The translations under genes were made by a program, and so were the position numbers. Source: Macrostomum lignano (Eukaryota). Taken from it: DNA of 64,000 bases. This document shows positions 8,587-56,200 of this stretch, in pieces (the stretch's first letter is position 1; every line of letters begins with the position of its first letter). The notes beneath the pieces are model-generated. The model did not search any database. It saw only the letters and a program-made list of their open reading frames with translations, and was not told where the DNA came from. Where the stretch lies: contig NIVC01001497.1 in NCBI GenBank assembly GCA_002269645.1, forward strand, positions 1 through 64,000, read 5' to 3'.

Positions 8587-9335
8587 GCAGCCCAATTGGA
8601 CCTACGCAAATTGAATTTTATCCAAGATACGTTAGCCAATGTAATGGACTTTTGTCTATGGTAGCAAGGCTGGCACAGCGGCATTTAATTTGGTCCTACA
8701 AGCATCAATTTGGTCGTGAGCCATTCGAGAAACTTTTGCCTTCTCGCAACTGTCTGGAGGTTGTTGCATACCGCTGGAATGTCAGCGGTTCTAGCTCGTA
8801 CCAACAATTTTCAGTCGCTTTTCCAGCTAGAGCTCTGCTGATAATCAAAATCTGATAACTGACTGGAACTGTTCCTTCAACTTCTGCTGCATTTTCTGCA
8901 ACGTCAACAGAGGGTTCGTCTCAACTGCATCGAGTAGCAGTTGGATCTGAGGCTCTCAAGCAACTTGCCTTGGCGATTGCCACCCTTTCGCAGGCATTCT
9001 CTGCCGGCAGAGTTTCAACGCGCTGATGGATGCTGTAAACCATATTTTTTATATTCAGCAATCTTGCAACCTTGCAATGTCCTTTGGGTGTTCACCTCTG
9101 TCGAGTGCTTCGATCACAAGCCAATGGCATTCGTTCAACAGCCTAGCATATGATCCACAATTCTGGGGCTGGTCTTGCGCCTCCGCAACAGTTGCAAATG
9201 AAGCTATGGACCAAATAGATGCTTGTTGGACCAAATTAAATGCCGCTGTGCCAGCCTTGCTACCATAGACAAAAGCTCCATTACTTTGACAAACGTATCT
9301 TGAATTAAATTTAATGCGCGTTATGGGTAGGCTGC
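8587..9335 (-). mobile_element. Internally deleted Tc1/IS630-like DNA transposon with ~130-bp terminal inverted repeats
   Basis: 8587-8715 is the reverse complement of 9209-9335, with a near-perfect core gatgcttg.ggaccaaattaaatgccgctgtgccagccttgctaccatagacaaaag. Between the arms, a frameshifted minus-strand remnant reads LVIEALDRGEHPKDIAR..VYSIHQR..LRKGGNRQGKL..QIQLLLDAVETNPLLTLQKMQQKLKEQF..ISRALAGK..PAVCNNLQTVARRQKFLEWL, typical of the N-terminal HTH region of Tc1/IS630 transposases. No DDE domain; target-site duplication not resolved. Confidence 0.7.
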
Positions 9336-16900: not shown

Positions 16901-17985
16901 GAGACTAACCGGTTAGAATGCTGTGGAGACTGACTAGATCCACCCCTATGTACAGTGTTGGAGGATGGACCCGCCACTGTGTACAGAGATGGAGGCTTAA
17001 ACGCCCCTGTGCATCATGATGGAGCCTGAAACTCCTCTGTGCACCATGATTGAGGCTAGATCCGCCTCTGTCCACCATGATAAATTTATTAAAAATTAAA
17101 TGTATGGATAACAATTAAAGGCAAACTAATAGTTGAACTTACAATATTTTCTTCATAGTCTTCAACAAATCCACATAGCAATGGTTTCATATATTTTTCA
17201 ACAATCAACTTGTCATTGTGCATTGCTGTCCACACATCCTGAAAATGCAAAAAAGAGAAATTTGAAATTTACAAGCTTGTATCAATATGTACATAAACAA
17301 GATAATAGCATTGCATAAAATATATCATGTATTTTTGTTTGTGACAATAATTGACTTTTAAAAAGGTTTAATTAATAGAGTTAAAATTAAATGTCTTCTG
17401 CAACAGATTTTACGTCTGCTAATTAATGTTGTTTTAACGACTTACTCAAGTTATTTGTTGTTTTACATTATTTATATATTTGATATATCTCAAATGAAAA
17501 TAACAGATGTTATTTTGTCTTTGTCTTTGAAATAATCAAAATTATTGATTGATTTTTTGGTTGACAGGTTTAATCTTTGGCTTGTGAATAATCTTAGCTT
17601 AATTTATCCAGTAATTATTGATTACAAATTAAACTGACTAGATTATTAAAATTCCTAGGAATAAAAATAATAGTATATTAAGGAGAAGAACTTGCAAAGA
17701 GTAAAATGCAACGAATGTGGGGCCTAGCTATCAATATTTCATTTATCAATTACTGTGTAGGAAGTTTTATTCTAATAATTTTTTACTTCTTTCTCTTACC
17801 GTTGCATCTTCACCAGAATATGATGCAATCACTTTTGCACCACCTGGATGCCTGTGAATGAACTCTGTAACATCGTACACTTTTCCATGGATAACAATTA
17901 GCTTTCTTTTTGAAGTTCGTCGTCTGTACTCTTGAAGTGATTCCATTGTAAAAGACGCCATTCGGTTATTATTCTCTGAACCCAT
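13901..17985 (-). CDS. fads2: Front-end fatty acyl desaturase (FADS1/FADS2-like, cytochrome b5 fusion), 6 exons, 443 aa
   Basis: Exons 17985-17800, 17238-17143, 16904-16549, 16034-15699, 15349-15173, 14081-13901 sum to 1332 nt with all GT/AG junctions in phase. Heme motif HPGG plus DVWTAMH; histidine boxes HDYGH, HWWNFRHFLHH and QIEHH; C-terminus [18 protein letters not shown]. Delta-5 versus delta-6 specificity cannot be read from sequence. Confidence 0.93.
14551..14767. mobile_element. MITE copy A (family shared with 31303-31579)
   Basis: Ends atactcagcaacattgaaacgtcgcc ... ggcgactttttaattttgttgagtata are inverted. Internal blocks (gctctttgc.ccagtgagc; cgtagc..a.ttgcgtcactc; gcact..caaa.gtggcgac) match copy B. 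Confidence 0.65.
14789..15070. repeat. 43-bp minisatellite in desaturase intron 5
   Basis: Unit atggccctgtctagttcccaaaatggcactgctcagagctcat, about 6.5 copies. Confidence 0.95.
15591..15670 (+). mobile_element. tRNA-derived SINE-like head in desaturase intron 4
   Basis: A-box-like gcagctcaaaggtaaacgcg and B-box ggttcgattc (15643-15652) at tRNA spacing; no complete cloverleaf. Confidence 0.45.
16055..16445. repeat. 16/18-bp minisatellite in desaturase intron 3
   Basis: Units actggga(ga)gacacaagg; this array produces the spurious repeat ORFs. Confidence 0.95.
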
Positions 17986-21184: not shown

Positions 21185-22640
21185 ATGCAGCCAGGTAGCA
21201 GCTACCGACTATCGCTGGTCCTGACAGTCCTGTTGCTGCTGACCGTCGCGGCCTCACCACTGTTCGACTACGAAGACCAGCCTCTCAGACAGAGCCTGGC
21301 AGAGGATTTCGATGAACAGCCGGATGTGGCAGCCGCGGCAGCTTTCAAGCGGCAGTTCCAGTTGGCGCTGAAGACGCCCAGGTTCAACTCCGCTAAGCAG
21401 CTGCACGCCTACATCAGGCAGCTCGAGGTCTACATGAAACTGCTCGGCCGTCAGAGGTTGTTTGCTTTCACTATTGTTTCCCACCTATTCATAATTGAGA
21501 GGTCTCAGAAAAATTTCAATGCCCTTGCCAAGTGGAATGACTCCATCGTCAATGACTGCTCCCGTGTGCTCAATCTAAAATTGAGAACGCCCGTGCTATT
21601 TATTGTATTACGAAACGCTATTGTATTATGGCCTTTTAATCGCTTTCACGTCAGTAAGCAAGGCAGCTCGATCCTAGCATTAAAAAATTAACTGCTCGCA
21701 TGCAAGCCTTTGAACGAGAAGACAAAGAGACCAATAATGCCACCCATCCACCCACCTGCATAATTCATTTGTGAAAAGCATTTCATTCATGCAGCTCGCG
21801 TCATCGCCCCCGAACCCAGAATTCAATTCCGCAACTCATATTTGCATATAGAAAGGCACCCTTCTCGAAGCAATTTTTAGATGAGAGCAAAATATTTTTG
21901 GTTTGAAGGTGCAGGATGGTCTTGTGACCTCGTGCGACCTGCTGCTACTAACCTTTGCAGTCCGAATCGCTGATTCCTGGTTGCACGCAGCCACTCCTGC
22001 ATCATCCTGTCTCTAAGCCAGCAGCTGAATCCGCTGATTCCTGGTTGCACGCAGCCACCCCTGCATCATCCTGTCTCTAAGCCAGCAGTTGAATCCGCTG
22101 ATTCCTGGTTGCACGCAGCCACCCCTGCATCATCCTGTCTCTAAGCCAGCAGTTGAATCCGCTGATTCCTGGTTGCACGCAGCCACCCCTGCATCATCCT
22201 GTCTCTAAGCCAGCAGTTGAATCCGCTGATTCCATGCTTGCACGCAGCCACCCCTGCATCATCCTGTCTCTAAGACAGCAGCTGAATCCGCTGATTCCAT
22301 GGTTGCACGCAGCCACCCCTGCATCATCCAATGCTATCCTGTCCTGTCCTATCCTGTCTCTAAGCCAGCAGTTGAATCCGCTGATTCCTGGTTGCATGCA
22401 GCCACCCCTGCATCATCCTGTCTCTAAGCCAGCAGTTGAATCCGCTGATTCCTGGTTGCACGCAGCCACCCCTGCATCATCCTGTCTCTAAGCCAGCCCC
22501 CCTTTCTCCGTAGGTTCGGCAAGCGCTTCGCCGTCAAGAGCCGCAGAGTCGAAGAGAAGAAGCGATCTTCGTCAACCTCGAATTCCATTGATCGCCGGCT
22601 GAAGGGCATCGACGAAAAGCTCAGCCTACTGTTGAGCTGA
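21185..22640 (+). CDS. npf: Neuropeptide Y/F-family precursor, 2 exons, 132 aa
   Basis: Exons 21185-21456 and 22514-22640. Signal peptide (LSLVLTVLLLLTVAA), acidic propeptide ending in KR, then a 36-aa peptide QFQLALKTPRFNSAKQLHAYIRQLEVYMKLLGRQRF followed by GKR (amidation and cleavage). The intron splits the penultimate Arg codon (AG|G), the conserved NPY/NPF intron position. Confidence 0.9.
21955..22495. repeat. 64-bp minisatellite in the NPF intron
   Basis: Unit gaatccgctgattcctggttgcacgcagccacccctgcatcatcctgtctctaagccagcagtt; ends about 15 nt before the acceptor. Confidence 0.95.
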
Positions 22641-31960: not shown

Positions 31961-32405
<445 letters not shown>

Positions 32406-34299
32406 TAGTTTTAGTACTTAGTAGTTAGTACTTTTCTCAACCGAATACTTAGCTTCTTGCAAGCAAATTTCAGAAACAGAACATATTTAAAAACTGAACA
32501 AGCAAGGCTGTGAGTTCCAAACTGATTATGATACTGAAATAAACAATATGAATAATCTCTTTTTATTATAATTTTAAGGCTTTTCTATTTTGCGTAAATT
32601 TAAGTTTTTGCTTCATCGTGCAATATATTCGTCATCATCATCATGCAATATCATGGCTTCGCAATATCTATGCGCGCAGTTCCATTTCGAATAACAAAAT
32701 AGTCAATTATTTGTTAGAGAAAGTTAGCCTATGCCATGTCTATGTCTATTTTCCAATATTGTATTAGTTTAATCCTTCGTCCCTTAGGCTTAGTATAGTT
32801 TGCCCCCTAAAAATTTTCTGGATCTACAATCAAAATAATAATAAGCATAATTGCTTAGCCCTATTCAAATTCAAATATGCATGTTTCTTAAAAAAAACTT
32901 CTCTTGACTTAAATAACAAGTAAAGTTGTATTTCATTAAATTTTGTAAACTAATTTATAGGGGGGCCTAACCTAACTAGGGCCTATGGCCTAGGCCTTGA
33001 AATGTCAAAAAAAATTTTTTTAATTTAACAATGAAATTATCTATTGACTATATTAGGCCTATATATGATCTACTTTTTGCCATTTGATAGTTAACTTTGC
33101 CTAAGAAAAATTGTTACTTTGCATGATCATCGTCATTAAAAGATTAATTGGGCATTTAGGTAGATTCAAATATATCTAGTTGTAACTTCTCTTCAGACTT
33201 ATATTTTTGTTCTTTCTTTGCATCTTTGGTCATTGACATTGCCACTAACATTAGCAATGAATTTGTCGTTAACTCACAAAATTGTTAATGCAAATTAATT
33301 AATCTGTTAGGCCTAATTCAAAAAAATCTTAATTGCAGTCTGTTAATGTTAATGGAAAATCTTAATGCTTATTAATGCTTATTAATTGATTAATGCTTAT
33401 TAATAGACTGGTGCCCAACATTGCCAAATGACTATTTTACAAAAAGGCTTTTAATAAAAGGTTTTTGATAAAATTGTTATCTATTAAGTACTAGTACTAT
33501 CAATGTATCATATTACCAATTTGTAATAAAGTAGGAATTTTTTAGGTTAAAATTAGACTTAGACCTATAATGTTTAAAAAATGGACAAAGTATTTATTTG
33601 ACAAAATTGCATTTAATAGGCCTAAAATAACCTAGTATATCAATTATATTCCATGTTCCTTCTTTAAATATTAAAATTATTTATTAAGTCTTGATAGCCC
33701 TTTTATAGCCAATGGCCATTATAATAAATAGTGTAGCATAAATTGACCTCCTTATAGTTCAGAAAGCAACATACATATTGGAATTTCCTAATAAAGAATA
33801 CTCATACAAAATTGGCAATTAACAATTGTTGGTGCAAATTTTGGTTTACAAAGCTATTTATATGCTAAAACAGTTGTCTATTAGTATATGATCATTTTTA
33901 ATCTGATTTTAAAGGGCTTTCAATAATAAAATAGAGTAGAATGAATTATTTCGCTAATAAAAAACTAACAATAAGCTTTGAATTAAAGTGTGATATATAG
34001 ACTAGTATATATTAGGCATGTTTTGTTTGTGATGTAACCTAGGAAATGATAGCTTATAGAGCTATGGCTGAAGGTACTAATGCCAGGGTAGAAAGAGATC
34101 AGATCTCACCTTCCCAGGGGCATTAGACCTAGATAAAGAATTGGTAGCTTGTATTATAGTTTGATAACAAGGTCCCACTGTTTGATCATAACTATGGACA
34201 GAGTCTTGAAAGTATAGACTATTTAAAGTATATGTAGTTTTGCCACCACCATAGCACTACTATGCTAGGCATCTAAAAAGTATCTTGACAGTATTTAGA

Positions 34300-36250
34300 A
34301 TGAGGTCCCTTGCATAAGGGGCTTCTGATCTGCGCAAGGTCAAGACTCCCTGATTTAGCTAGGTTTGAAATAAAAGGAGAGTTCAAATAAATAATGATTT
34401 GACTTCCATCTTCTGGCAAGCTATAGTGCTATCATCAGAAACAATAAGGAATTGGCTTCTATTGATTTAGGCTCTGTGCACAGGTTTTAGAATACATTTG
34501 TTTGCAAGTACCATATGCATATAGTTACACATACTTTACTATACCTGAAATCTCTACAATTTGCCAATAGTTTCAGTTTTGTATCCCTGCAGCCCTAGCT
34601 TTCTCACTAGCCTGCATGCTTAAAAGATAAATAAATCAAAGCAGGACAACTGGGTTATGATTTTCACCTAACAAGTAACTTAGCTACATATAATACTTGA
34701 GAATGAATAATTGAATTTTTGCAAACCAGGATTTGGATCCCAATGGTCAATCCTAGGATTTTCAAATCCTAGACAATTTCGATCCTAGGATTTAGAATCC
34801 TAGGATTCTGGCATAATTGAAATCCCAAGATTTAGAATCCTAGGATTTGGGACTAATTCTAGGATTCTGGGATCCTAGGATCCTAGGATTATATGCCCTA
34901 TTTCCCAGCAATACAACAAGGGTACTTGTCATTTTTAATGCATATCAGCATATATCCTAGTATATATAATATAGTGGAAAAATTGTGTCAATGACACATT
35001 TTTTTAGTTCTGGTATACAAACAATTAATTGTATTTTTTTCTTGCATTAGACCTAGTGTATATTAATACATGATCCAAACTTTGGTTGGCCCTTAATGGT
35101 ATAGGCATAGTTTGATATACTAAGTATAATCTGGTGCAGGAAAGGGAGCTACATTGGGCATGGTTTAGAGTCTAGGCCTTATCTGCAATAGGAATTGATA
35201 GTAGGCTACTTATTTACTTTTACTTCTATATCTTTTAAATCTAAAAAAGCGACTATACTGCACTATATAAATAATCCAACACTGCCTAAAATCATTGTAC
35301 TAGTTAGCTAGCATCAGGAAAACTACTGGGTATAATATCTAATTGTCCTGGTTGACTACTAGTGGGATGGATATAAGAATAGACCACTGTCTCAATATGT
35401 TTTTTGACATCTCTCTGTAGATATGACTAGATTCATTCTTAAGAATTGGGTATGATTTAACCTTTTTAGTGTCAAAAACTTGAAACTTGGTTGGTTCTTG
35501 ATGAATATTCAGAAGCTTTTGATTTTAGTCTTCTGAGTTTATAATTGCTATTCTGTATCCTTTGTCATAGTTAAGAATTTTTATGTCAGTGCTCTTGCAA
35601 AGCTTGTTTATCATTTGATAGAGGCTTAAGTTTTTTGTAACAGATAGGTGACTTGGGGCTTTATTGGTAAACTGATAATAAGCAGAGATAATTTCATGGC
35701 AACATTTTGTTGGTACCTCTATGCTGTTCTAGCCTATACAATGTCTAACCTAACTGTTCTACAAATGCTTGAAGGTGAAAATTCTTTATGCTTTTAGGTA
35801 AAACTAGATGATGTATAAACCATAGCTTAAGGCTTCTTGCTAAGCTAGATTAAGTTTGTACTTACTGGTATTGGTGATACAATTCAAACTATTTTGCCAT
35901 TGCTCATGCCAGAGTGTTATTAGCTTTCTTATGGATTTCCTTCACCATTCTCTGGTGTTCCCAGTTCTTTCTTGCTATCAGAGATAGTAAGACCTGGGAT
36001 GTGAGTACACTAACCAGTGACTAAACTGTATGTTTGATTTCCTTGATTCATCTCGAGAGGTCTACTGTTAGTGTTGGTTATTTACACAAATTTGATATTT
36101 GATTAAGCATTGTATTTCACTTGGATTGCAGGCAAAGATGCTTGGGAGTTTAAACTTGGCAAACCTGGGAACAATGCTAAGTTGTTGGTAGGCTTGGAGG
36201 AATTCATTATCTAGCTAGATCATTAGTTCTCACATTTGAAGTGGCCAGCT
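34300..36250 (-). mobile_element. Decayed Penelope-like retroelement (N-terminal/pre-RT region clear; possible GIY-YIG remnant), RT core missing
   Basis: Minus-strand translation with stops and frameshifts: IVPRFAKFKLPS (~36170); ITNTSKYKLNLA*QEALSYGL (~35880-35820); KNLSLYQMINKLCKSTDIKILNYDKGYRIAIINSED*NQKLLNIHQEPTKFQV (~35635-35475); KKHIETVVYSYIHPTSSQPGQL (~35400-35340). These match the Penelope consensus L..DI.I..DKG..V......Y..K and P.GS.PG.L. Weaker QFLI..KSLFI*TL..KPS.N near 34450-34340. Confidence 0.75.
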
Positions 36251-36714
36251 GAACTAAACTCAGGATGTCAAAATTAAAGTATTAAATTTTCATATACTAT
36301 CCTATTTTGAATGTTTTATTTTGTACTACCACAGTACCACTGTTATGTGTGATTTTTCTGCCATTAGCTAAACGTTTTGGTGCTTTTTCTGGTGTCATTA
36401 GACAGTTAGAACAATATTTTTGTAGATTATTTTGTCAATAAAAGAAGCAAATATTTAATTTTAGCCAGTCCTTAATATTTATTCTTTAAAAAGTGCAAAA
36501 TGCCTTGGGGATATGAAACAAATAATGTTTTTAGACATCTTGTAGGCCTTATGCTTGAATTTAAAGTCATGTTAAGAATTGCACATTTAGGTGATTTTTT
36601 AACTTGGACTAAATTTCAATCTTTGAATATTAGTTATAAAGACCATTTTTAGTATATTATAATTTAATAGATGCTAACTAATAATAAGGATCTTTGATCT
36701 GACAACCTATGAGG

Positions 36715-36920
36715 CTAACTAGCTCAGTGGTAAACGCATATTACTCTTGCGTCACAACCCTTGATATGATCTAGATAAATTTGGGGCTTGTGCACAAAAT
36801 TGTTGGCCGATGGGTTGTCGTTGCGATTCACAACCAATATGTGCCAACCTCCAAGGCACAGGAAGTGTACACGCCTGACGATAAGAAAGCCAGGGCTTAT
36901 GTACACGCCAAAATCGATGC
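36715..36920 (+). mobile_element. Degenerate tRNA-derived SINE-like copy
   Basis: A-box tagctcagtggtaaacgc, resembling the head at 15600; eroded B-box; tttggggct...gtacac shared with the element at 40640-40848. Confidence 0.4.
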
Positions 36921-37081
36921 GCGATTGCGCGAAATGGCCCAGTTTGAATGCAAATGTAACAGCTGTCTATGGCCAAGTAGAACAGCTTTGCACTGGCCCT
37001 AATTCAACAAAAAGCGGCTAAAATCTCACACAAAAAAGCTAGATAGCGACATATTTGCCAAAACCTGCCCGCAGCAAAGCT

Positions 37082-40000
37082 ATGTGCACGCTGAAGCCGC
37101 ATCAAGTGGATTTCGATTTGGCCTGGAATAAACTGGTTCGCACCGTAGATCGCGTCCTACAATGCGAAGACGTTGCTAAGGAGACGTGGACCGATACATT
37201 CTTCACCATCTACAGTCTGTGCGTTGCTGCCCCGGAGCCCCACTGCGGCAGCCTGTACACGCATGTTAATAGCTTTCTACAGCAACACTGTCAGGCTGTT
37301 TTGCAGCGCTTAGACCAGGTGCCAGACGTTGAACTGCTGGCAGCTTATCACCGCAGTTGGCGCACCTATTACGACGGTTCCAGCTACCTGCACAGGCTAT
37401 TTCGCTATCTAAACGTGCATCACGTGCAGAAGAAGCAGCCAAGCGACGCCGATCTGTGCTACGGCGGCATGACCCGCAGCGCCGATGCCCACACTCTGGA
37501 GGTATTCGAGCTAGCTATGGACATCTGGTACCGGATGCTGCAGCAATTGGCGCCGCGGCTCTGCCCGCTGGTTCTAGCTCAAATCGAGCTCAGCCGCCGT
37601 GGCGTCAGCATAGACGGCAGCCGGCTTAGCAGCGTTGTCCAGTCATTTGTTGACGTGGTGCACTGGGACAGAAAGCGCTGTCTGACCTTCTACACTGAGC
37701 AGATTGAGCAGCTGCTGTTGGCCCAGACGGCCGAGTTTTACGCTGCCGAAGGGGATGCATTGTTTGCTAGGCAGCCGGTTCACCGCTACATTGAACTCGT
37801 GCTGCAGCTGCTGCGAGAGGACGGCGAACGGATGCAGGCCCTGCTGCACCCGAGCTCTGTGGATAAGGTGCGCCAAGAGGCTGAGCAAAAGTGAGTGAAT
37901 AACTACATGCTGATTTTGGAGACTTTGCTTGATGCCCCGCTGGAAAATAGGGAAGGATTTTGGTTCGGGTTTTTTTAGTTCGGATGGATCCGTTCAGTGG
38001 GAGAATATCCGGTCGTTTCTTCGGATATGTGACGCCAACTTTACATATCCCGACGTTTTGTTCGGATATTATAGTTCTGTATCCGGACGAAACGGCCCGA
38101 TGCGTAGATTGAATCCGGAGGTAAGTCCAGAAATTTTTGTCCGGATAAGTCACATATCCGGGTGGTAATCCGGATATTCGTCCGGAAAAATATCATATCT
38201 GGACATATCCGGCTGTTCATTCGGAAAAGTGCCCCTGTCCGGATCCGGATACGCTATATCCGAACCAAAAAATATCCGTCCCATTTTTTCCGCGGGTGCA
38301 TGCGATGTTCCTATCCTATCTTTCCTTCCTTTCTACTCCTATTCTTGAAATCCCCCTCTTCGCTGTCTCTGTAATCCACCTCTCCGCTCGTTTCAGTTTT
38401 TAATCCTCCACTTTCTCTCTCTTTCTCCCTCTCTCTCTCATCTCCCCTCCCTCTTTGTAATCCGCTCCGCTCCCTCTCCCTATGTTATTGTGCTACACAA
38501 TCGGAAGACATTTGATTTACCAATGTCTTCAATCCTGCAGGCTTGTTGAGAACTTCCTGCCGCAGCTGAATCAGGCCGCTGTCGGGTTTGTTGAGCAGGA
38601 AGAATCGACTAACCTGGCCAACCTGTTCCAACTCACCCGATCGCTGCCAGAGGGTCACAAGGAGCTCCGCAGGCTGTTTGAGGCGCATATCTGTTCAGCT
38701 GGAGAGCAGGCGCTGGCCACCGTTGGCTCGTCGGAGCCCGCCGCCGCTGCCCAGGAGTTTGTTGACGGCCTGAGACAATTGCACGAAAAGTTCAAAGCCT
38801 GGGTTAGGGGCACGTTTAACGACGATGCGCAGTTTGATCGGTCGCTTGATTTGGCACTATCGAAAGTTGTTAATCAGCTGGACGCTGCAGGTGATTTAAT
38901 TGCATTTGGTTATTGCTGTTTTGCTTGGCGGCTTTATGTCAGACTCTTCTGTGCAGCTTGTGTTCATAATGGATCAGCGAGTTAGGGAATGGTGATGCGG
39001 GTGATATATGTTGGTCACCACAATTGGGAGATTTGTTATGATGAAATTTTGCTTCCGTCTAACCAGACACGGAAGTGAAATCTTAATCTTCACTTCAAGT
39101 CTTAATCCGACTTGATAGGGTGAGATTTTGATTCTCTCGGACTATATGGGTGTGATTTTGATTCTCTCGGACTAGATAGAGTGAGATTTTGATTCTATCG
39201 GACTAGATAGGGTGAGATTTTGATTCTCTCGGACTAGATAGAGTGAGATTTTGATTCTATCGGACTAGATAGGGTGAGATTTTGATTCTCTCGGACTAGA
39301 TAGAGTGAGATTTTGATTCTCTCGGACTAGATAGGGTGAGATTTTTATTCTCTCGGACTAGATAGAGTGAGATTTTGATTCTATCCGACTAGATAGGGTG
39401 AGATTTTGATTCTATCCGACTAGATAGGGTGAGATTTTGATTCTATCCGACTAGATAGGGTGAGATTTTGATTCTCTCGGACTAGATGGGGGAGATTTTG
39501 ATTCTCTCGGACCAGATAGAGTGAGATTTTGATTCTATCCGACTAGATAGGGTGAGATTTTGATTCTCGGCCTAGGTGTGTGTGATTTTGATTCTCTCGG
39601 ACTAGATAGAGTGAGATTTTGATTCTATCCGACTAGATAGGGTGAGATTTTGATTATCTCGGACTAGATAGGGGAGATTTTGATTCTCTCGGACTAGATA
39701 GAGTGAGATTTTGATTCTATCCGACTAGATAGGGTGGGATTTTGATTCTCTCGGACTAGATAGGGTGAGATTTTGAGTCTCGGACTAGGCATGGGTGAGA
39801 TTTTGATTCTCTCGGACCAGATGGGTGAGATTTTGATTCTCTCGGACCAGATGGGTGAGATTTTGATTCCATCCACCTACTTACAATGCGCCAGGCAAGA
39901 AGCAGTGCAAGTCGCCCGAGCTGCTCGCCCGATACGTTGACGCAATGCTGCGCAAATCATCCAAAGCCGTTAGCGACAGCGAATTGGAGGAGAAGCTCAG

Positions 40001-43000
40001 CCAGTGCATCGGCATCTTTAAATACGTCGAAGACAAGGACGTATTCCAGCGGCACTATCAGCGCCTGCTATCCAAACGGTTGATCCTGGGCGTGTCGCAC
40101 TCGTCCGAGGCCGAGGAGGGCATGATCTCTAAGCTGAAGTCTGCCTGCGGCTACGAGTTCACTTCCAAATTTCAGCGCATGTTTCACGATGTCCGGCTGT
40201 CCGAGTCGCAGTCGTCCGATTTTGCCGACGCGCACGGACGCGACGCTCTGGGCATCTCTCTGCACGTGTTCGTGCTGACCCAGGGCGCCTGGCCTCTGCA
40301 GGCGTCGAATACGCCGTTTCCCAGGCTGCCCAGCCCGCTGGAGCGCGGGGTGACGCTGTTTCAGCGGTACTATACTAATAAGTTCCAGGTAAGTAAAGCT
40401 TGTTCTGGTGAAGTACAGAATTCCTTAACATTCCAATGTAAAACCGAAAGCCATGAATTTGAACTCGCAAGTCGGGAGTCCCGAACTCACGTTATTATTT
40501 ATTAGAGGCAGAGGGCTGTGTACACCTTGGCGCACTTTAAGCGACATTGTCACACAACCGGCGAGAGGCATTGCCGCCCATTCCGCCGACTCCCCTGAGC
40601 AGGCACACAAGCGCGCGGATACGTACGCAGTCATACGCACAGGCACACACTCACACAGGAGTGTACAGCGGCCCTAACTTTACAGTGCCTTGAGGGTTGG
40701 CCCTCAAAGGCGTTAATTGCACGAGCAGAGCCAAGCCGAGATTCCAATTTAGCCCCAAATAATGCGACTGCACTTGGAATCGAGCCTGGGCCGCTGGCGC
40801 ATCAGAGCGCCGCGCTAGACCATTGGGCTGCAACCCCCCCCCCGTTACTGAACTCGCAGTCAGGAATCCCGAACTTGCAGTCAGGAATCCCGAAGTCGCA
40901 GTCAGGAATCCCGAAGTCACAGTCAGGAATCCCGAACTCACAGTCAGGAATCCCGAACTTGCAGTCAGGAATCCCGAAGTCACAGTCAGGAATTCCGAAG
41001 TCACAGTCAGGAATTCCGAAGTCACAGTCAGGAATTCCGAAGTCACAGTCAGGAATCCCGAAGTCACAGTCAGGAATCCCGAAGTCACAGTCAGGAATCC
41101 CGAACTCGCAGTCAGGAATCCCGAAGTCACAGTCAGGAATTCCGAAGTCACAGTCAGGAATCCCGAAGTCACAGTCAGGAATTCCGAAGTCACAGTCAGG
41201 AATTCCGAAGTCACAGTCAGGAATCCCGAACTCGCAGTCAGGAATCCCGAAGTCACAGTCAGGAATCCCGAAGTCACAGTCAGGAATCCCGAAGTCACAG
41301 TCAGGAATCCCGAAAGCAGTTGCAGTCTATAAACACACAAAAAGCTGTCCTCCCCATTCCACTAGGGCCGGCGCCTCACCTGGCTGCATGCGCACGGCAC
41401 AGCCGACATGAAGCTGAAGTTCAGTCGCACCTATTCGGCTACTGTTGGCGCAGCCCAGGCCATCCTGCTGCTGCAGTTCAACGACCTGCCAGCTAGCCGG
41501 ACCCTGTCGCTAGCCGATCTGGCTAACGCAGTCGGTGTCGGCGAGGCCGAACTGCAGCGCTGCCTGGCCCCCCTCATCGACTGCGGCATCCTGCAGGCCG
41601 ACGCGACTGGCCAGCAGCTGCACGTCAATCAGGAGTTTCACAGCAAGCGGTCGCGACTCCGGGTCCTGCCTGCGCCAGCCAAGGAGGCCGAGAAAGAGCA
41701 GGAGCGTGTCGCCTCCCAGATTCAGGAGGATCGAAAATTCTTCCTGCAGGCGGCGATTGTGCGGATTATGAAGGATCGAAAACGGCTTAACTTTAATAGC
41801 CTTACTCAGCTGGTTAGTCTCATGTTTCGAGCTTAATACTGTAGCATGTTGTTTAACTTGCCCCGTGTCCTTAGCTAATTAGTCTCACCTTTGATGCCCC
41901 CGTGTCCTTAGCTAATTAGTCTCACCTTTGATGCCCCCGTGTCCTTAGCTAATTAGGCTCACCTTTGATACCCTTGTATCCTTAGCTAATTAGGCTTACC
42001 TTTGATGCCCCGTGTCCCTAGATAATAAGGCTCACTTTTGATACCCTTGTATCCTTAGCTAATTAGGCTCACCTTTGATACCCTTGTATCCTTAGCTAAT
42101 TAGTCTCACCTTTGATACCCTTGTATCCTTAGCTAATTAGGCTCACCTTTGATACCCTTGTATCCTTAGCTAATTAGTCTCACCTTTGATACCCTTGTAT
42201 CCTTAGCTAATTAGGCTCACCTTTGATACCTCTGTATCCTTAGCTAATTAGGCTCACCTTTGATACCTCTGTATCCTTAGCTAATTAGGCTCACCTTTGA
42301 TACCTCTGTATCCTTAGCTAATTAGGCTCACCTTTGATACCTCTGTGTCCTTAGCTAATTAAGGCTCACCTTTGATACCTCTGTATCCTTAGCTAATTAG
42401 GCTCACCTTTGATACCCTTGTATCCTTAGCTAATTAGGCTCACCTTTGATACCTCTGTATCCTTAGCTAATTAGGCTCACCTTTGATGCCCCAGTGTCCC
42501 TAGATAATAAGGCTCACCTTTGATACCCTTGTATCCTTAGCTAATTAGTCTCACCTTTGATGCCCCCGTGTCCTTAGCTAATTAGTCTCACCTTTGATGC
42601 CCCCGTGTCCTTAGCTAATTGGTCTCACCTTTGATGCCCCCGTGTCCTTAGCTAATTGGTCTCACCTTTGATGCCCCCGTGTCCTTAGCTAATTAGGCTC
42701 ACCTTTGATGCCCCCGTGTCCTTAGCTAATTAGTCTCACCTTTGATGCCCCCGTGTCCTTAGCTAATTGGTCTCACCTTTGATGCCCCGTGTCCTTAGCT
42801 AATTAGGCTCACCTTTGATGCCCCGTGTCCCTAGATAATAAGGCTTATACTTTCTCTCCTTACTCCTACTTATCAATAACTGCAACCCGCAGGTGCTGGT
42901 GCAGACAACTCCCAGGTTCAAGCCGGAGGTGAAGATGATCAAGACCTGCATAGAGAGTCTCATTGAGAAGGAATACTTGACCAGATCTCAGGCCAAGCTA

Positions 43001-47218: not shown

Positions 47219-50200
47219 GTGTCTTGTGGATGTGGATCTTCTCGGCAGCTTACAGAGCTCATACCTTGTACTAACCCTGTTTCCCAGATACGTAGGCGAG
47301 TCAATCAGCGAGGAGATTCACATGAAGAAGCACCGGATCGCCGCCATCGGCATCGCACCCTGGGGCGTCATCCGCGACCGGGAACAGCTGATTGGCCGAA
47401 ATCGGACCTGCAAATACTTCGCAATCAGCTCGTCTAGCAAGGCCCTGTCCGTGTTGAACAGGTGTCACAATTATTTCATCCTGGTTGACGACGGCCAGTC
47501 AAATGTCTATGGCACGGAGATCCAGCTGCGCAGGGCCTTCGAGCGGCACCTGTGCTCGATGCGGCTGGACAAGTCCAGATTCGGCGTCGGCCTGGACCGC
47601 GTGCCCGTTGTTGCCACGCTGATCGAAGGCGGAGCCAACGTGTTCCGGCACGTGCTGGATCTGACGCTGGACCGGCGCCCCATTCCCGTGGTTGTGTGCG
47701 ACGGTAGCGGCCGGGCTGCCGACATTCTCGCTTTTATACACAAGAACGGGGAGCAGGTGCGCGCTCGGGGCCATTGTTCGTTGGGCTAGATAGTATTTAA
47801 TTATGCTTGATTTTTATGCTTAGATTAATGCAGAAATTAATTAGTTTATTGATTACTCGACTAATGTACTGATTTATTTATTGATTGCATGACAGCTTGT
47901 CAAATGACTGATTAACCGATCCAGTGATTGATTGATTGATTGATCCAATGATTGATTGCATAATCCAGTGATAGATTTATTGATCAAATGAGTGATTGAT
48001 TTATCCAGTGATTGATTTATTGATCAAATGAGTGATTGATTTATCCAGTGATTGATTGCTTAATCCAGTGATGGATTTATTGATCCAGTGATTGATTGAT
48101 TAATCAAATGAGTGATTAATTGATTGATACAATGATGGACTTATTGATCCAGTGATGGATTTATTGATCCAGTGATTGATTGCTTTATTGATCCTATGAT
48201 TGATTGATTGATCGATTGGTCCTATGATTGATTGATTAATTGATCCAGTGATTGATTGATTTTATCAACAAATAATTGATACAATGATTGTTATATCGAT
48301 TACTCGTAGTTTGTTGACTAATGCGTTTTTATCTTAAGGATAAGTTAATAAAGGATTAAAAAACCTTCTTTACCGTAGGAAAATAAATTGATAAACAGGC
48401 CACATATTTTTCCAGGCTTTCTATATTTGTAGTTAGAGTACAATTAAGTACATTCCGCCCTATCCAGGTGCTGAACTGTACAGCCCTGGCCGATCAGATA
48501 GTCGATCTAATCCGAGACAAGTTCCGCTTGGCCAGAAGCAAGGCTCTAGCCGTATTCAGCGAGATCCGCGTCTGCCTGCAAGGCCCCGGCCGCGACCTGG
48601 TGTCCGTGTTCCGCCTCGGCGAAGGCCGCTTCAAAGACGTAGACGACGCCATCTTGACCTCGCTATTGAGCTCGCATCACCTGTCGCACAGCAGCCAGCT
48701 GAAGTTGACCATGGCCTGGAATAGGGTCGATCTGGCCCGCTCCCACCTGTTCCAGTACGGCCAGGACTGGCGATCAGCTGATCTGGAACGGGCCATGATG
48801 GAAGCCCTGATGAATAACAGAATTGAATTTGTTAAGCTGCTGCTAGAATGGGGCGTCAATGTTGAGAGATTCCTCACCCGCCTGCGGCTGGAGGACCTGT
48901 ACACATTCTGCCTGTTTGGCGATGAGACTAAAGGCTTGGGCAAGTATCTGCGATTCCTATTGAAACAGACGCTGGCTAAGTTTTCTAAGAAACAGCAGCG
49001 AGTGTCGCTATATCTGATTGGCCGCCTGGTCCAGGAGCTGATCGGTGGCGGCTTTGTGCATGAGTACACCCGCCGGTTCTGTCTGGCCAAGGCTGCCGTC
49101 AGATCCGCTAGCGGCGCCCTGCCGCCCGACGCTGCTGCCGGCGCTACAGGGGGTCTGGCCTCCGAGCAGGTGAGCACAAGATGCACGAAAAAGATAATTA
49201 TGGGATTTTGAAAATCTGAGAGAGTCTAGGCCTAGTGTGATTTTGATAAATCTAGACTAAGGGGATATCGGGATTTTGAGATTAGGAAATCTAGGATAAA
49301 ACTAAAGTATGATTTGGGAATCTAGGACGTGATTAAGATCTGTGTGTGGGATTGTGAAATCTAGGATGAGATTAGAACTCTTTAGTGGGATTAATGATAT
49401 CCAGGGATGAGATTAGAGATCTGTGGTGGGATTGGGATATCTAGGATGAGATTAGATTTCTGTAGTGAGATTGCGAAATCTAGGATGAGATTAGAGACCT
49501 GGGGTAGGATTGAAGATGAGATTTAAAGATCCGAAGTGGGATTTGGATACCTTGGATAAGATTAGAGATCTATGGTGGGATATGGATATCTAGAATGAGA
49601 TTAAAGATCTTTACTAAGATTAGAGATCTGTGGTGAGATTAAGAAAAATTAGGATGATATTTGAGATCTGGAGTGAGATTGCAAATTCTAGGATTACCGA
49701 GATTAGAGATCTGTGGTGGGATGGCAATATCTAGGGGTGAGATTAGAGATCTGTGGTGGGATGGGTATACCTAGGATGCATCTCATGAGATAGAGATCTG
49801 TGGTGAGATTAGAGATCTGGGGTGAGATTTCAAATTCTAGGATTGCCGGAGTTAGAGATCTAAGGTATGATTTAGACATCTAGGATGATATTACAGATCT
49901 GTGGTGAGATTGTAAAGGGATGAGATTAGAAATTTGTGGTGGAATTGGGATACCTAGGGATGGGATTAGAGATCTGTGGTGGGATCGGGATATCTGGGGA
50001 TGAGATTAGAGATCTGTAGTGAGATTGAGAAATCTAAGACGAGATTAGAGATCCAGAGAGAGATTTGAAAATCTAAGAGGAGATTCTAAATCTAGGATGT
50101 GATTAGGAAATCTAGTTTTAGAATAATTAATGTAAAATTTGGAACCAATGAGATGAGAGATGAGAGAGTTTAGATTAGAAAATTTTGTACCGGGCATAAG

Positions 50201-53200: not shown

Positions 53201-56200
53201 TCATGCGTCAGGTTCCGGAGGAATCCCTTAGCGACAAAATCGACCGGCTGGGCTTGCAGAGTGGCGGCAGCGGCCAGGCCAATGCCAAAAAGTCCGGAGG
53301 TCGGGTGAACTTTGTGAACGAGCTGCCAATGACTACTATTGTGGCGCCGCAGGCTCAGCAGCACGCTGGCAAGACTGCCCAGCTGCCCAGAATTGGTGAG
53401 TCAGAGTTGATTTCTGTGCAAGTTCATTTGCTAACTCATTTTGAATGTATGCCGCACATTCTCTAAGCTAAAACATTGAACATTTCTTTGTATTCGGTTT
53501 AGTCATTTTTCTACTACTCAGCTCTTAATAGTATCCTTTTCAACTGCCATTTGGGCTCAAATAAACTCAAATTCAAGTGCTATTGGTGTCATTTTGAGCT
53601 TAAATAAACCGACTGGTGCCATTTTGAGCTCAAATAAACCAACTAGTGCCATTTTGAGCTCAAATAAACCAACTAGTGCCATTTTGAGCTCAAATGTACC
53701 GGTTGGTGCCATTTTGACCCCAAATAAACCGACTAGTGCCATTTGAGCTCAAATAAACCGACTAGTGCCATTTTGACCCCAAATAAACCGACTAGTGCCA
53801 TTTGAGCTCAAATAAACCGACTAGTGCCATTTTGAGCTCAAATAAACCGGTTGGTGCCATTTTGAGCTCAAATAAACCAACTAGTGCCATTTTGAGCTCA
53901 AATAAACCAACTAGTGCCATTTTGAGCTCAAATAAACCAACTAGTGCCATTTTGAGCTCAAATAAACCGGTTGGTGCCATTTTGAGCTCAAATAAACCCC
54001 TAGTGCCATTTTGAGCTCAAATAAACCAACTAGTGCCATTTTGAGCTCAAATAAACCAACTAGTGCCACTTTGAACTCAAATAAACTAACTAGTGCCATT
54101 TTGAGCTCAAATAAACCAACTAGTGCCATTTTGAGCTCAAATAAACCAAGTTGTGCCATTTTGAGCTCAAATAAACCAACTAGTGCCATTTTGAGCTCAA
54201 ATAAACTAACTAGTGCCATTTTCGAGCTCAAATAAACCAACTAGTGCCATTTTGAGCTCAAATAAACCAACTAGTGCCATTTTAAGCTCAAATAAACCGG
54301 TTGGTGTCATTTTGAGCTCAAATAAACCAACTAGTGCCATTTTGACCCCAAATAAACCAACTAGTGCCATTTTGAGCTCAAATAAACCGGTTGGTGCCAT
54401 TTTGACCCCAAATAAACCAACTAGTGCCATTTTGACCCCAAATAAACCAACTAGTCAACTAAACCAACATTTTGAGCTCAAATAAACCAAGTAGTGCCAT
54501 TTTGAACTCAAATAAACTAACTAGTGCCATTTTGAGCTCAAATAGACTAACTAGTACCATTTTGAGCTCAAATAAACCAACTAGTGCCATTTTGAGCTCA
54601 AATAAACTAACTAGTGCCATTTTCGAGCTCAAATAAACCAACTAGTGCCATTTTGAACTCAAATAAACTAACTAGTGCCATTTTGAGCTCAAATAGACTA
54701 ACTAGTACCATTTTGAGCTCAAATAAACCAACTAGTGCCATTTTGAGCTCAAATAAACTAACTAGTGCCATTTTCGAGCTCAAATAAACCAACTAGTGCC
54801 ATTTTGAACTCAAATAAACCAACTAGTGCCATTTTGAGCTCAAATAAACCAACTAGTGCCATTTTCGAGCTCAAATAAACCAACTAGTGCCATTTTGAGC
54901 TCAAATAAACCGGTTGGTGTCATTTTGAGCTCAAATAAACCGGTTGGTGTCATTTTGAGCTCAAATAAACCAACTAGTGCCATTTTGAGATCAAATAAAC
55001 CAACTAGTGCCATTTTGAGCTCAAATAAACCAACTAGTGCCATTTTGAGCTCAAATAAACCAACTAGTGCCATTTTGAGCTCAAATAAACCAACTAGTGC
55101 CATTTTGAGCTTAAATAAACCAACTAGTGCCATTTTGAGCTCAAATAAACCGACTGGTGCCATTTTGAGCTCAAATAAACCAACTAGTGCCATTTTGAGC
55201 TCAAATAAACCAACTAGTGCCATTTTGAGCTCAAATGTACCGGTTGGTGCCATTTTGACCCCAAATAAACCGACTAGTGCCATTTGAGCTCAAATAAACC
55301 GACTAGTGCCATTTTGAGCTCAAATAAACCGGTTGGTGCCATTTTGAGCTCAAATAAACCAACTAGTGCCATTTTGAGCTCAAATAAACCGGTTGGTGCC
55401 ATTTTGAGCTCAAATAAACCAACTAGTGCCATTTTGAGCTCAAATAAACCGACTAGTGCCATTTTGACCCCAAATAAACCAACTAGTGCCATTTTGACCC
55501 CAAATAAACCGACTAGTGCCATTTTGACCCCAAATAAACCGACTAGTGCCATTTTGACCCCAAATAAACCAACTAGTGCCATTTTGACCCCAAATAAACC
55601 GACTAGTGCCATTTTGACCCCAAATAAACCAACTAGTGCCATTTTGACCCCAAATAAACCAACTAGTGCCATTTTGACCCCAAATAAACCGACTAGTACC
55701 ATTTTGAGCTCAAATAAACCAACTAGTGCCATTTTGAGCTCAAGTAAACCCATGACTGAATATAAAGCATTTGTGTTTTTAGTTTATCATCATTCATATT
55801 CACAGAATCCGTTATTACACATTTTTAACCGTAAATTTATTTTAAATCCTATAAAATTTCTCAAGAATTTAGGCGCATGTTATTCATACTGTGCGTGACT
55901 CTAAGCATACAGAATGCGCGCATGTGATTGAGATTCGACAATTGTTGGAATCGGTAAATTGCAATAGCCAAAAACCCACCAGAGTTATTCATCGGACCAA
56001 ATGTTAACACGTTTAATGCTGCATGTTTTCATTAACTAGTATTGTCTAACATTTTTAATCGTATTTTCTATTGAAAGTAATATGATTGCGCATTGTTTTT
56101 AATTTTACCGCTGTTTTAGTCGTCTGATATCTTAAGTTTATCTACTCGTAGCCTTACTGTGTGCTTGTTCCAGCTCGTTAACCCATAATCCATAGACGGT

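What the first reader, a model, noticed from the sequence alone, without database searches (positions are those of the whole stretch)
32800..36720. Sharply bounded CpG desert with apparent CG-to-TA conversion over transposon relics (RIP-like signature in an animal)
Seen: I count only about 8 CpG in 32821-36720 (3.9 kb), against roughly 100 expected from composition. CpG returns at ~36740, and similarly AT-rich DNA at 43-46 kb is CpG-normal. CTAG/CCTAGG is abundant: at least 7 cctagg in atcctaggat-type motifs at 34760-34890, ggcctaggcc at ~32990, and a minus-strand gtagatccag at ~32820. These read as atcccgggat, ggcccgggcc and gcggatccag, common GC-rich MITE words, with CG changed to TA. The Penelope motif P-T-G-S-Q-P-G-R appears as PTSSQPGQ (ACC GGT to ACT AGT; CGA to CAA). 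Established: 5mCpG deamination gives TG or CA, after which the site is no longer CpG; high-frequency TA needs a second hit at CpA, which is the hallmark of fungal repeat-induced point mutation. Inference: a repeat-targeted methylation or deamination system acting on CpG and CpA has erased this block.
Basis: partly seen in the sequence, partly recalled or inferred. Interest (0 to 1): 0.85.

Follow-up and report, generated by a model that had tools for sequence, protein, structure and literature searches.

The report
Sharply bounded CpG-free DNA island
A 4-kb non-coding stretch just upstream of a cullin gene in an unidentified animal genome has lost almost all its CpG while everything around it keeps them. 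The pattern fits ordinary CpG-only decay in one probably methylated island, not a fungal-style RIP process.

Summary
Between the CpGs at 32778 and 36735 (3,956 bp, 31.6% GC) there are 8 CpG against 98 expected, while comparable AT-rich host DNA has CpG o/e 0.83. CTAG, CCTAGG and AGGCCT are enriched.

The RIP-like reading is not supported:
- CpA/TpG is not depleted (rho 1.12 in the block and in host DNA).
- TpA/ApT is 1.01 and (CpA+TpG)/(ApC+GpT) is 1.36, so the composite RIP index is negative.
- The block is not repeated in the window.
- 18 minisatellite arrays and a 718-bp inverted-repeat element keep their CpG.
- No reverse-transcriptase or other protein relic is detectable, so the Penelope claim fails.

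One claim holds. 34700-34900 is a relic of a MITE family that carries AATCCCGGGATT repeats in contigs of other organisms; here the repeat centres are TA. A TA-type array also occurs in a foreign, CpG-poor contig.

Once CpG is set aside, the right 1.5 kb of the block is indistinguishable from host DNA. The left 2.4 kb is compositionally distinct.

Best reading (0.5): long-standing CpG-specific decay in place, probably from cytosine methylation confined to this island. Main rival (0.2): recently imported or misassembled DNA. Methylation data and the rest of the genome are needed.

The parts
32779..36734 (.). CpG desert: 3,956 bp, GC 0.316, 8 CpG against 98 expected. Non-coding, and unique within the window.
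   Evidence: counts and bounds; no ORF over 50 aa; no Pfam hit; no copy in the window, not internally repetitive
32800..35200 (.). Part A: compositionally distinct from host DNA even with CpG set aside. CC/GG, CCTA/TAGG, GGCC, AGGCCT and CCTAGG are enriched, and short perfect palindromes are over-represented.
   Evidence: quasi-independence distance to host 0.149 against a control maximum of 0.116
35201..36730 (.). Part B: indistinguishable from host AT-rich DNA in every dinucleotide except CpG.
   Evidence: distance 0.057 against a host control mean of 0.060; foreign pieces average 0.120 and only 1 of 89 is as close
34700..34900 (.). Relic of a short inverted-repeat element (MITE) with AATCCTAGGATT-type palindromic repeats. 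Repeat centres are TA in 7, TG in 1, CA in 1. It includes a 40-nt local duplication (34775-34814 and 34815-34854).
   Evidence: arrays and duplication; transition-blind BLAST scores 57-73 against 42-54 for shuffles; alignment score 130 against 34.8 +/- 6.0, maximum 57
34880..34900 (-). Terminal-inverted-repeat-like end, TAGGGCATATAATCCTAGGAT. The family end is TAGGGATTGCAATCCCGGGAT: 15 of 21 identical, 19 of 21 when purine/pyrimidine only is compared.
35343..35366 (-). No support was found for any protein relic here.
32440..32778 (.). Left flank: equally AT-rich (GC about 0.31) but with normal CpG (9 in 340 bp). This shows that the CpG loss is not a side effect of AT-richness.
31962..32430 (.). 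(AGT)155 microsatellite lying 350 bp to the left of the desert.
36735..37081 (+). Right flank: CpG-normal presumed promoter and 5' region of the cullin gene.
37082..37894 (+). First coding exon of a cullin-family gene, CpG o/e 0.91. The Cullin profile starts at position 1.

Best explanation
The block is old, non-coding intergenic DNA. Its right part looks like native host sequence. Its left part is transposon-derived and includes a MITE relic.

It has sat for a long time under a mutation regime that removes CpG and nothing else. The most likely cause is germline cytosine methylation confined to this island, which makes 5-methyl-C in CpG deaminate to T, while the surrounding genes, introns and satellites stay unmethylated.

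The TA-centred palindromes (CCTAGG) need no RIP-like enzyme. Either they were inherited from a MITE lineage whose repeat already had TA at its centre and were partly copied by local duplication, or they are the ordinary long-term fate of a lost CpG (CG to TG or CA, then a normal transition to TA) in DNA drifting towards 31% GC.

Shown: the CpG-specific loss, its bounds, the host-like signature of part B, the MITE homology and the negative RIP indices. Inferred: methylation as the cause, and that the loss happened in place.
For: 1. The loss is specific to CpG. CpG rho is 0.08 against 0.83 in host DNA. CpA/TpG is 1.12 against 1.12, TpA 0.97 against 0.87 (host 4-kb subsets range 0.77-0.99), and GpC 1.41 against 1.47.
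2. With CpG treated as a structural zero, part B (1.5 kb) lies at distance 0.057 from host DNA. Host controls average 0.060. Foreign pieces average 0.120, and only 1 of 89 is as close. This is what native DNA that lost only its CpG would look like.
3. The loss covers two compositionally different parts (A and B) with common sharp bounds, which fits a regional process.
4. An equally AT-rich left flank keeps its CpG.
5. There is no ORF, Pfam hit or protein homolog, so the DNA is old and decayed.
6. A transposon relic is present, and transposon-targeted CpG methylation is known in some invertebrates (PMC7343188).
7. In foreign contigs the centre of this repeat tracks the CpG level of the flanking sequence. 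CG-centred copies have flanks at o/e 0.97. Contigs dominated by TG or CA centres have flanks at about 0.5-0.96. Two TA-centred contigs have 0.43-0.44.
Against: 1. There is no TpG/CpA surplus. Quasi-independence o/e is 0.95-0.99 in the block against 1.08 in host DNA. Recent deamination of host-like DNA should have raised it; only a near-equilibrium, very long exposure fits.
2. The genes here show no sign of past methylation. Cullin and TRPM exons have CpG o/e 0.81-1.17. Animals with DNA methyltransferases usually methylate such genes (PMC7343188).
3. An o/e of 0.08 is, as far as I recall, lower than is usual even in fully methylated genomes.
4. Other repeats in the window are not depleted.
5. 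Part A differs from host DNA beyond CpG.
6. No methylation data and no methyltransferase gene can be examined from one 64-kb window.
Confidence: 0.5

Rival explanations
1. Recent arrival. The block evolved in a CpG-depleted (methylating) genome or genome compartment. It reached this site recently, by horizontal transfer, by capture of stray DNA at a break, or as an assembly or contamination artefact.
For: - The bounds are sharp and the block has no similarity to the rest of the window.
- Part A has its own oligonucleotide signature: CC/GG 1.31 against 0.85, CTAG 2.9x against 1.06x, GGCC 4.9x against 1.27x, plus a palindrome excess.
- If the host does not deplete CpG, 8 CpG allow at most about 2-3.5% divergence since arrival.
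- A related TA-type array sits in a foreign contig with CpG o/e 0.49.
- The window has no CG-type copy of the MITE.
Against: - Part B matches the host's own dinucleotide signature; only 1 of 89 foreign pieces is as close.
- The block shares the host's unusually high GpC (1.41 against 1.47).
- No terminal repeats or target-site duplication are found at the edges.
- There are no intact or recognisable genes, as a freshly arrived autonomous element would have.
- No match in the plasmid or phage collections and no exact ORF on record elsewhere.
- An artefact flanked by host DNA on both sides is unusual (inference).
Confidence: 0.2
2. A RIP-like, repeat-targeted deamination acts on CpG and then on CpA, turning CG into TA across transposon relics.
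For: - At the MITE relic, 7 of 9 repeat centres are TA, 1 TG and 1 CA, where the foreign family has CG. If the ancestor was CG-type and the sites are independent, this exceeds the 26% background G/C-to-A/T transition level (P = 0.0017).
- CTAG is enriched throughout the block.
- With CpG set aside, TpA is slightly up (1.00 against 0.88) and CpA/TpG slightly down (0.95 against 1.08) relative to host DNA.
- A host satellite shows a CG, CA, TA series at a single dinucleotide.
Against: - RIP indices are negative in every 1-kb window of the block: TpA/ApT 0.93-1.14 and (CpA+TpG)/(ApC+GpT) 1.21-1.50. The block total gives a composite index of -0.34, against -0.25 for host DNA.
- 474 CpA+TpG remain per strand, which is not depleted.
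- The block is not a repeat in this window.
- Tandem arrays and a young inverted-repeat element are untouched.
- The TA centres are not independent, because a 40-nt unit carrying them was duplicated locally. A TA-type array exists elsewhere as an amplified family with 12 TA to 1 TG.
- The excess of NTAN words does not follow the host's NCGN contexts (r = -0.43).
- The CC/GG excess is unexplained by this model.
Confidence: 0.05
3. Founder effect without methylation. The block is built from transposon or satellite lineages whose sequences happen to lack CpG. This is how the window's satellites lack CpG, simply because their repeat unit has none.
For: - The other CpG-poor stretches of the window are exactly this.
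- The block holds two small arrays and a MITE relic.
- The host has CTAG-rich satellites of its own, with ATCTAGGAT words at 49.2-50.2 kb.
Against: - Outside the two small arrays the block is no more repetitive than its dinucleotide shuffles: repeated 12-mers 2 against 2.0 +/- 1.8.
- A diverged unique sequence in a CpG-neutral genome would have regained CpG; only about 2-3.5% divergence is allowed.
- Part B is host-like, not repeat-like.
Confidence: 0.1

Closest known systems
CpG decay under transposon- or heterochromatin-targeted cytosine methylation (vertebrates; some invertebrates such as centipedes and mealybugs, PMC7343188)
   Same: CpG-specific loss. It is confined to a non-coding stretch that bears a transposon relic, with sharp limits against unmethylated DNA. 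The other C-N and N-G dinucleotides rise only by renormalisation.
   Different: No methylation evidence is available here. The neighbouring genes show no gene-body CpG loss. Depletion to 0.08 is extreme. There is no TpG/CpA surplus over host DNA.
Repeat-induced point mutation of Neurospora and other ascomycetes
   Same: The result is AT-rich, non-coding, stop-riddled DNA.
   Different: RIP depletes CpA/TpG and enriches TpA; here the indices are negative. RIP needs duplicated DNA, but the block is unique in the window and real repeats nearby are untouched.
RIP-like hypermutation at TpCpG in Pucciniomycotina fungi (PMC3318451)
   Same: Hypermutation aimed at CpG-containing sites in transposon-like DNA.
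   Different: That process is fungal. Here 5 of the 8 surviving CpG are TCG, so TCG is not the preferred target. No repeat family is available for testing.
MITE family with end TAGGGATTGCAATCCCGG and AATCCCGGGATT subterminal repeats, seen in JGI metagenome contigs (L001-L120)
   Same: The layout of palindromic repeats and spacers is shared, the end is TIR-like, and homology is significant when transitions are ignored.
   Different: Those copies are CG-centred and sit in CpG-normal DNA of other organisms. Here every centre is TA, TG or CA. No target-site duplication was found. The window has no CG-type copy. Assignment to the hAT superfamily rests only on my recollection of Ac-type ends.
Horizontally transferred transposons that keep the donor's composition
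   Same: A sharply bounded segment whose word usage (part A) differs from the host.
   Different: No ends, no target duplication, no coding capacity and no donor were found. Part B carries the host's own signature.

Membership tests
Fungal RIP (Neurospora type) | CpA/TpG depleted and TpA enriched: (CpA+TpG)/(ApC+GpT) below about 1.03, composite index above 0 | tested here: not met
   1.36 and -0.34 in the block; host DNA gives 1.22 and -0.25. All four 1-kb windows of the block are negative.
Fungal RIP (Neurospora type) | Acts on duplicated sequences | tested here: inconclusive
   There is no copy in the window, and the repeats that are present in the window are unaffected. Genome-wide copy number is unknown.
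Fungal RIP (Neurospora type) | RID/Masc1-type cytosine methyltransferase homolog in the genome | not testable with these tools
   Only one 64-kb window is available, and neither the host nor any close relative is in the protein collection.
Pucciniomycotina TpCpG hypermutation | Preferential loss of TCG/CGA | tested here: not met
   5 of the 8 remaining CpG are in TCG.
5mC-driven CpG decay | Depletion specific to CpG | tested here: met
   CpG rho is 0.08. With CpG set aside, part B matches host DNA in all other dinucleotides.
5mC-driven CpG decay | Surplus of TpG/CpA | tested here: inconclusive
   Rho is 1.12, equal to host DNA. That is the size expected from renormalisation alone, and no extra surplus is seen.
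5mC-driven CpG decay | Cytosine methylation of the region in the germline | not testable with these tools
   No read-level or bisulfite data are available.
AATCCCGGGATT MITE family (metagenome contigs) | Terminal inverted repeat TAGGGATTGCAATCC... | tested here: met
   34880-34900(-) is 15 of 21 identical and 19 of 21 in purine/pyrimidine code. There are 3 such hits in the block against 0-2 in 20 shuffles.
AATCCCGGGATT MITE family (metagenome contigs) | Ordered subterminal palindromic repeats with matching spacers | tested here: met
   Alignment score 130 against 34.8 +/- 6.0 for shuffles. Transition-blind BLAST to 10 or more family copies.
AATCCCGGGATT MITE family (metagenome contigs) | Target-site duplication flanking a complete element | tested here: not met
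   Reading the flanks of the candidate ends in the sequence, I found no matching duplication. The systematic scan covered only the edges of the block.
Penelope-like retroelement | Reverse-transcriptase domain (and GIY-YIG endonuclease) | tested here: not met
   No Pfam family in any of six frames at E<=10. No homolog for the longest open stretches.
Horizontally acquired DNA | Oligonucleotide signature foreign to the host over the whole segment | tested here: not met
   Part A is distinct (0.149), but part B is host-like (0.057 against a control mean of 0.060).

The most novel reading that the evidence does not exclude
This animal's genes and ordinary repeats show no CpG loss, yet it runs a domain-restricted cytosine-deamination system over transposon islands that carries CpG through TpG/CpA all the way to TpA. 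That would be a RIP-like genome defence outside fungi. The TA-centred MITE palindromes and the CTAG excess would be its footprint.
Probability: 0.05. Interest if true: 0.85.

Novelty: new member of a known kind. Interest (0 to 1): 0.4.

Why it matters
If the loss happened in place, this genome methylates a discrete transposon-bearing island while leaving housekeeping genes unmethylated. That combination is unusual for an animal, and it would make the locus a handy marker for how silencing is aimed and bounded.

If the block was imported, it is a rare visible case of non-coding foreign DNA in an animal germline, or an assembly error worth removing.

Either way, the case shows that CG-to-TA look-alike words at palindromic transposon repeats are not evidence of RIP on their own. 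The general CpA/TpG pool and the family's history have to be checked first.

Tried and rejected
- Self-similarity. BLASTN of the block against the rest of the window (word 7) gave no hit. Transition-blind BLAST also found nothing in the window.
- Protein relics. Six-frame Pfam gave nothing. A search with the 129-aa least-broken stretch gave nothing. An exhaustive HMMER search with the 67-aa open stretch hit only repetitive proteins through summed short stretches, which I judged spurious.
- Alternative genetic codes, to test for mitochondrial or ciliate origin, or for stops made from Gln codons as RIP would do. The 317-codon TGA-free run is matched by 35% of shuffles.
- RNA genes. No tRNA was found, and only sub-threshold Rfam matches.
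- Element ends. No inverted repeat with target duplication and no LTR-like direct repeat at the block's edges.
- Origin from recent local expansion. Rejected, because the block is not internally repetitive outside two small arrays.
- Host identification. The cullin exon had no hit. The TRPM exon had only 28-41% identity hits, several of them named as nematode proteins. Exact look-ups of two window ORFs found nothing. The host stays unidentified beyond 'bilaterian animal' (cullin, TRPM and NPY/NPF-like genes).
- Vector or phage contamination. No match.
- Literature. ATCCCGGGAT occurs only in cloning primers. The quoted Penelope motif is not found.
Full report
**1. The observation**

The window is 46.7% GC with an overall CpG o/e of 0.79. 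In 32821-36720 there are 8 CpG, an o/e of 0.083. Dense CpG ends at 32778 and resumes at 36735. Inside are only the sites 33131, 33267, 33952, 34333, 34780, 35250, 36054 and 36373.

For 32779-36734 (3,956 bp, GC 0.316) composition predicts 98.3 CpG. Against the level of comparable host DNA the deficit has P = 2e-25. AT-richness is not the cause. The 340 bp to the left have the same GC content and hold 9 CpG. Ten kb of non-tandem AT-rich tiles elsewhere in the window have CpG rho 0.83, and 4-kb subsets range 0.70-0.98.

All other strongly CpG-poor stretches are minisatellite arrays whose repeat unit simply has no CpG. The block is therefore the only large, complex CpG desert in the window.

CTAG occurs 33 times, 2.9x expectation against 1.06x in host DNA, and 25 of these lie outside the 34740-34900 array. 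CCTAGG occurs 8 times, 6 in the array. GGCCTAGGCC, GTAGATCCAG on the minus strand, and PTSSQPGQ are all present. The supposed ancestral words ATCCCGGGAT, GGCCCGGGCC, GCGGATCCAG and PTGSQPGR occur nowhere in the window.

**2. Context**

The window comes from a bilaterian animal that I could not identify.
- It carries C2H2 zinc-finger genes, an NPY/NPF-like peptide gene, a multi-exon TRPM channel and a cullin gene whose first coding exon starts at about 37082.
- The best database relatives of a TRPM exon are only 28-41% identical.
- The cullin exon found nothing, and exact look-ups failed.
- 22% of the window is minisatellite.
- The exons show no historical CpG loss, with o/e 0.76-1.17.

The block is intergenic. 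It lies between an (AGT)155 microsatellite and the cullin promoter.

**3. What the block is made of**

It has no ORF over 50 aa and no Pfam match in any frame at E<=10. No homolog was found for its least-broken stretches. There is no tRNA or Rfam family and no sign of a different genetic code. Apart from two tiny arrays it is no more repetitive than its own shuffles. It has no counterpart elsewhere in the window, even when transitions are ignored. Its edges carry no inverted repeats, direct repeats or target duplication. The Penelope reading has no support.

One transposon relic is real. A scan of metagenome contigs with ATCCYRGGATCCYRGGAT returned at least 120 contigs.
- In 85 matches both centres are CG. 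The match then lies inside a family of short (roughly 100-bp) elements with ends TAGGGATTGCAATCCCGG and ordered AATCCCGGGATT repeats.
- These sit in 40-47% GC contigs whose flanks have a median CpG o/e of 0.97.
- The contigs belong to other organisms. They match nothing else in the window, and their dinucleotide signature differs.

Block 34680-35000 matches many of these copies once purines and pyrimidines alone are compared: scores 57-73 against 42-54 for shuffles. A transition-tolerant alignment to the family end scores 130 against 34.8 +/- 6.0, maximum 57. A family-like end lies at 34880-34900.

**4. Is CG-to-TA a mutational signature here?**

At the relic, the repeat centres are TA in 7, TG in 1 and CA in 1. 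Suppose the inserted copy was CG-type and the sites are independent. This then exceeds the 26% G/C-to-A/T transition level at its other sites (P = 0.0017). Three things weaken that argument.
- The sites are not independent, because a 40-nt unit carrying two repeats was duplicated locally.
- A TA-type array is propagated as such elsewhere. Contig L018 has 12 TA centres to 1 TG and is 75% identical to the block's array. It lies in 600 bp without any CpG, inside a contig whose remainder has CpG o/e 0.49.
- Across the foreign contigs the repeat centre follows the CpG level of the flanks. CG-type flanks have 0.97, contigs dominated by TG or CA centres about 0.5-0.96, and the two eukaryote-like TA-type contigs 0.43-0.44.

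TA-centred versions therefore look like what this family becomes in CpG-depleting genomes. Two ordinary transitions restore the palindrome.

**5. RIP test**

RIP removes CpA/TpG and piles up TpA. Here CpA/TpG rho is 1.12 in the block and 1.12 in host DNA. TpA is 0.97, within the host range of 0.77-0.99. TpA/ApT is 1.01 against 0.97 in host DNA. (CpA+TpG)/(ApC+GpT) is 1.36 against 1.22, and the composite index is -0.34. Every 1-kb window of the block is negative.

The excess of NTAN words does not follow the host's NCGN contexts (r = -0.43). Reading TAA and TAG as Gln does not restore an ORF beyond chance.

Repeats that a RIP-like system should hit are intact. In 18 tandem arrays, distinct C>T events per site are 0.21 at CpG, 0.26 at CpA, 0.20 at CpC and 0.13 at CpT. 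A 718-bp element with 115-bp inverted ends is CpG-rich. Five of the eight surviving CpG are TCG, so the basidiomycete TCG-type process (PMC3318451) does not fit either.

**6. In place or imported?**

The block differs from host DNA beyond CpG: CC/GG is 1.31 against 0.85, and GGCC, CCTA/TAGG and AGGCCT are enriched. Perfect palindromes of 10 bp or more number 21 against 7.1 +/- 2.4 in shuffles. This is concentrated in 32800-35200.

I fitted a quasi-independence model that treats CpG as a structural zero. Under it, part A lies at 0.149 from host DNA, above every control. Part B (35201-36730) lies at 0.057, the same as host control subsets (mean 0.060). Foreign 1.53-kb pieces average 0.120, and only 1 of 89 is as close. 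The block also shares the host's high GpC, 1.41 against 1.47.

Part B thus looks like native DNA that lacks only CpG, and the desert spans two unlike parts with common bounds. That favours a regional, CpG-specific process acting in place.

Against this, there is no TpG/CpA surplus (0.95-0.99 against 1.08 under the same model). This fits only a long-standing, near-equilibrium regime. The neighbouring genes also show no sign that the lineage methylates DNA. If the host does not deplete CpG, the 8 CpG allow only about 2-3.5% divergence since arrival. That keeps a recent import or an assembly artefact alive. No vector or phage match exists.

**7. Verdict**

The RIP-like mechanism and the Penelope relic are not supported. 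The MITE correspondence is supported.
- Most likely (0.5): ordinary CpG-only decay in a discrete, probably methylated, transposon-bearing island.
- Next (0.2): recently imported or misassembled CpG-poor DNA.
- Founder effect without methylation: 0.1.
- RIP-like process: 0.05.

The decisive data are methylation calls, junction-spanning reads, orthologous loci, genome-wide deserts and the methyltransferase gene content. None of these is reachable from this window.

Noticed in passing
window 32800-36730 (list): Perfect palindromes of 10 bp or more are about three times more frequent than in dinucleotide shuffles: 21 against 7.1 +/- 2.4, or 14 against 6.8 without the MITE array. Four host AT-rich comparators show no excess.
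   Followed up: partly
window 53586-55750: A 30-bp satellite (about 72 copies) holds the variants CCGACTAG, CCAACTAG and CTAACTAG, a CG, CA, TA series at one dinucleotide. It also holds CCGGTTGG copies.
   Followed up: partly
window 41861-42845: A 37-bp satellite whose edge copies read GATGCCCCCGTGTCC while the central copies read GATACCCTTGTATCC or GATACCTCTGTATCC. CpG is kept only at the array edges.
   Followed up: no
window 8604-9321: A 718-bp element with about 115-bp terminal inverted repeats (67 nt at 97% plus 50 nt at 80% complementarity) and a CpG-rich interior. It looks like a young non-autonomous DNA transposon.
   Followed up: partly
window 49200-50200: A degenerate 40-bp satellite full of ATCTAGGAT and AGATCT words. 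It is CTAG-rich and CpG-poor (about 8 CpG by eye in about 900 bp), and its motif resembles the MITE repeat in the block. No significant alignment to the block.
   Followed up: partly
whole window: 28 tandem arrays cover 22% of the 64 kb, with periods of 3-64 bp. Many lie inside introns of the TRPM and cullin genes.
   Followed up: no
window 32800-35300: TTAGGC/GCCTAA hexamers occur 9 times, 7.3x expectation and 2.3 per kb against 0.43 per kb elsewhere. They are mostly part of TAGGCCTA palindromes and are never tandem.
   Followed up: partly
window 21185-21691 (+): An ORF with a signal-peptide-like start and a Pancreatic-hormone (NPY/NPF) Pfam match. The mature-peptide end reads ...YIRQLEVYMKLLGRQR at what looks like an exon end.
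   Followed up: no
L001-L120 (JGI metagenome contigs): An abundant MITE family (ends TAGGGATTGCAATCCCGG, AATCCCGGGATT repeats) occurs in many contigs of a few metagenome projects. The matches often lie at contig ends. The source organisms are unknown and CpG-normal.
   Followed up: partly
window 17081-17700: A very AT-rich stretch (about 25% GC) has only 2 CpG where about 10 are expected, a much milder and shorter CpG-poor patch.
   Followed up: no
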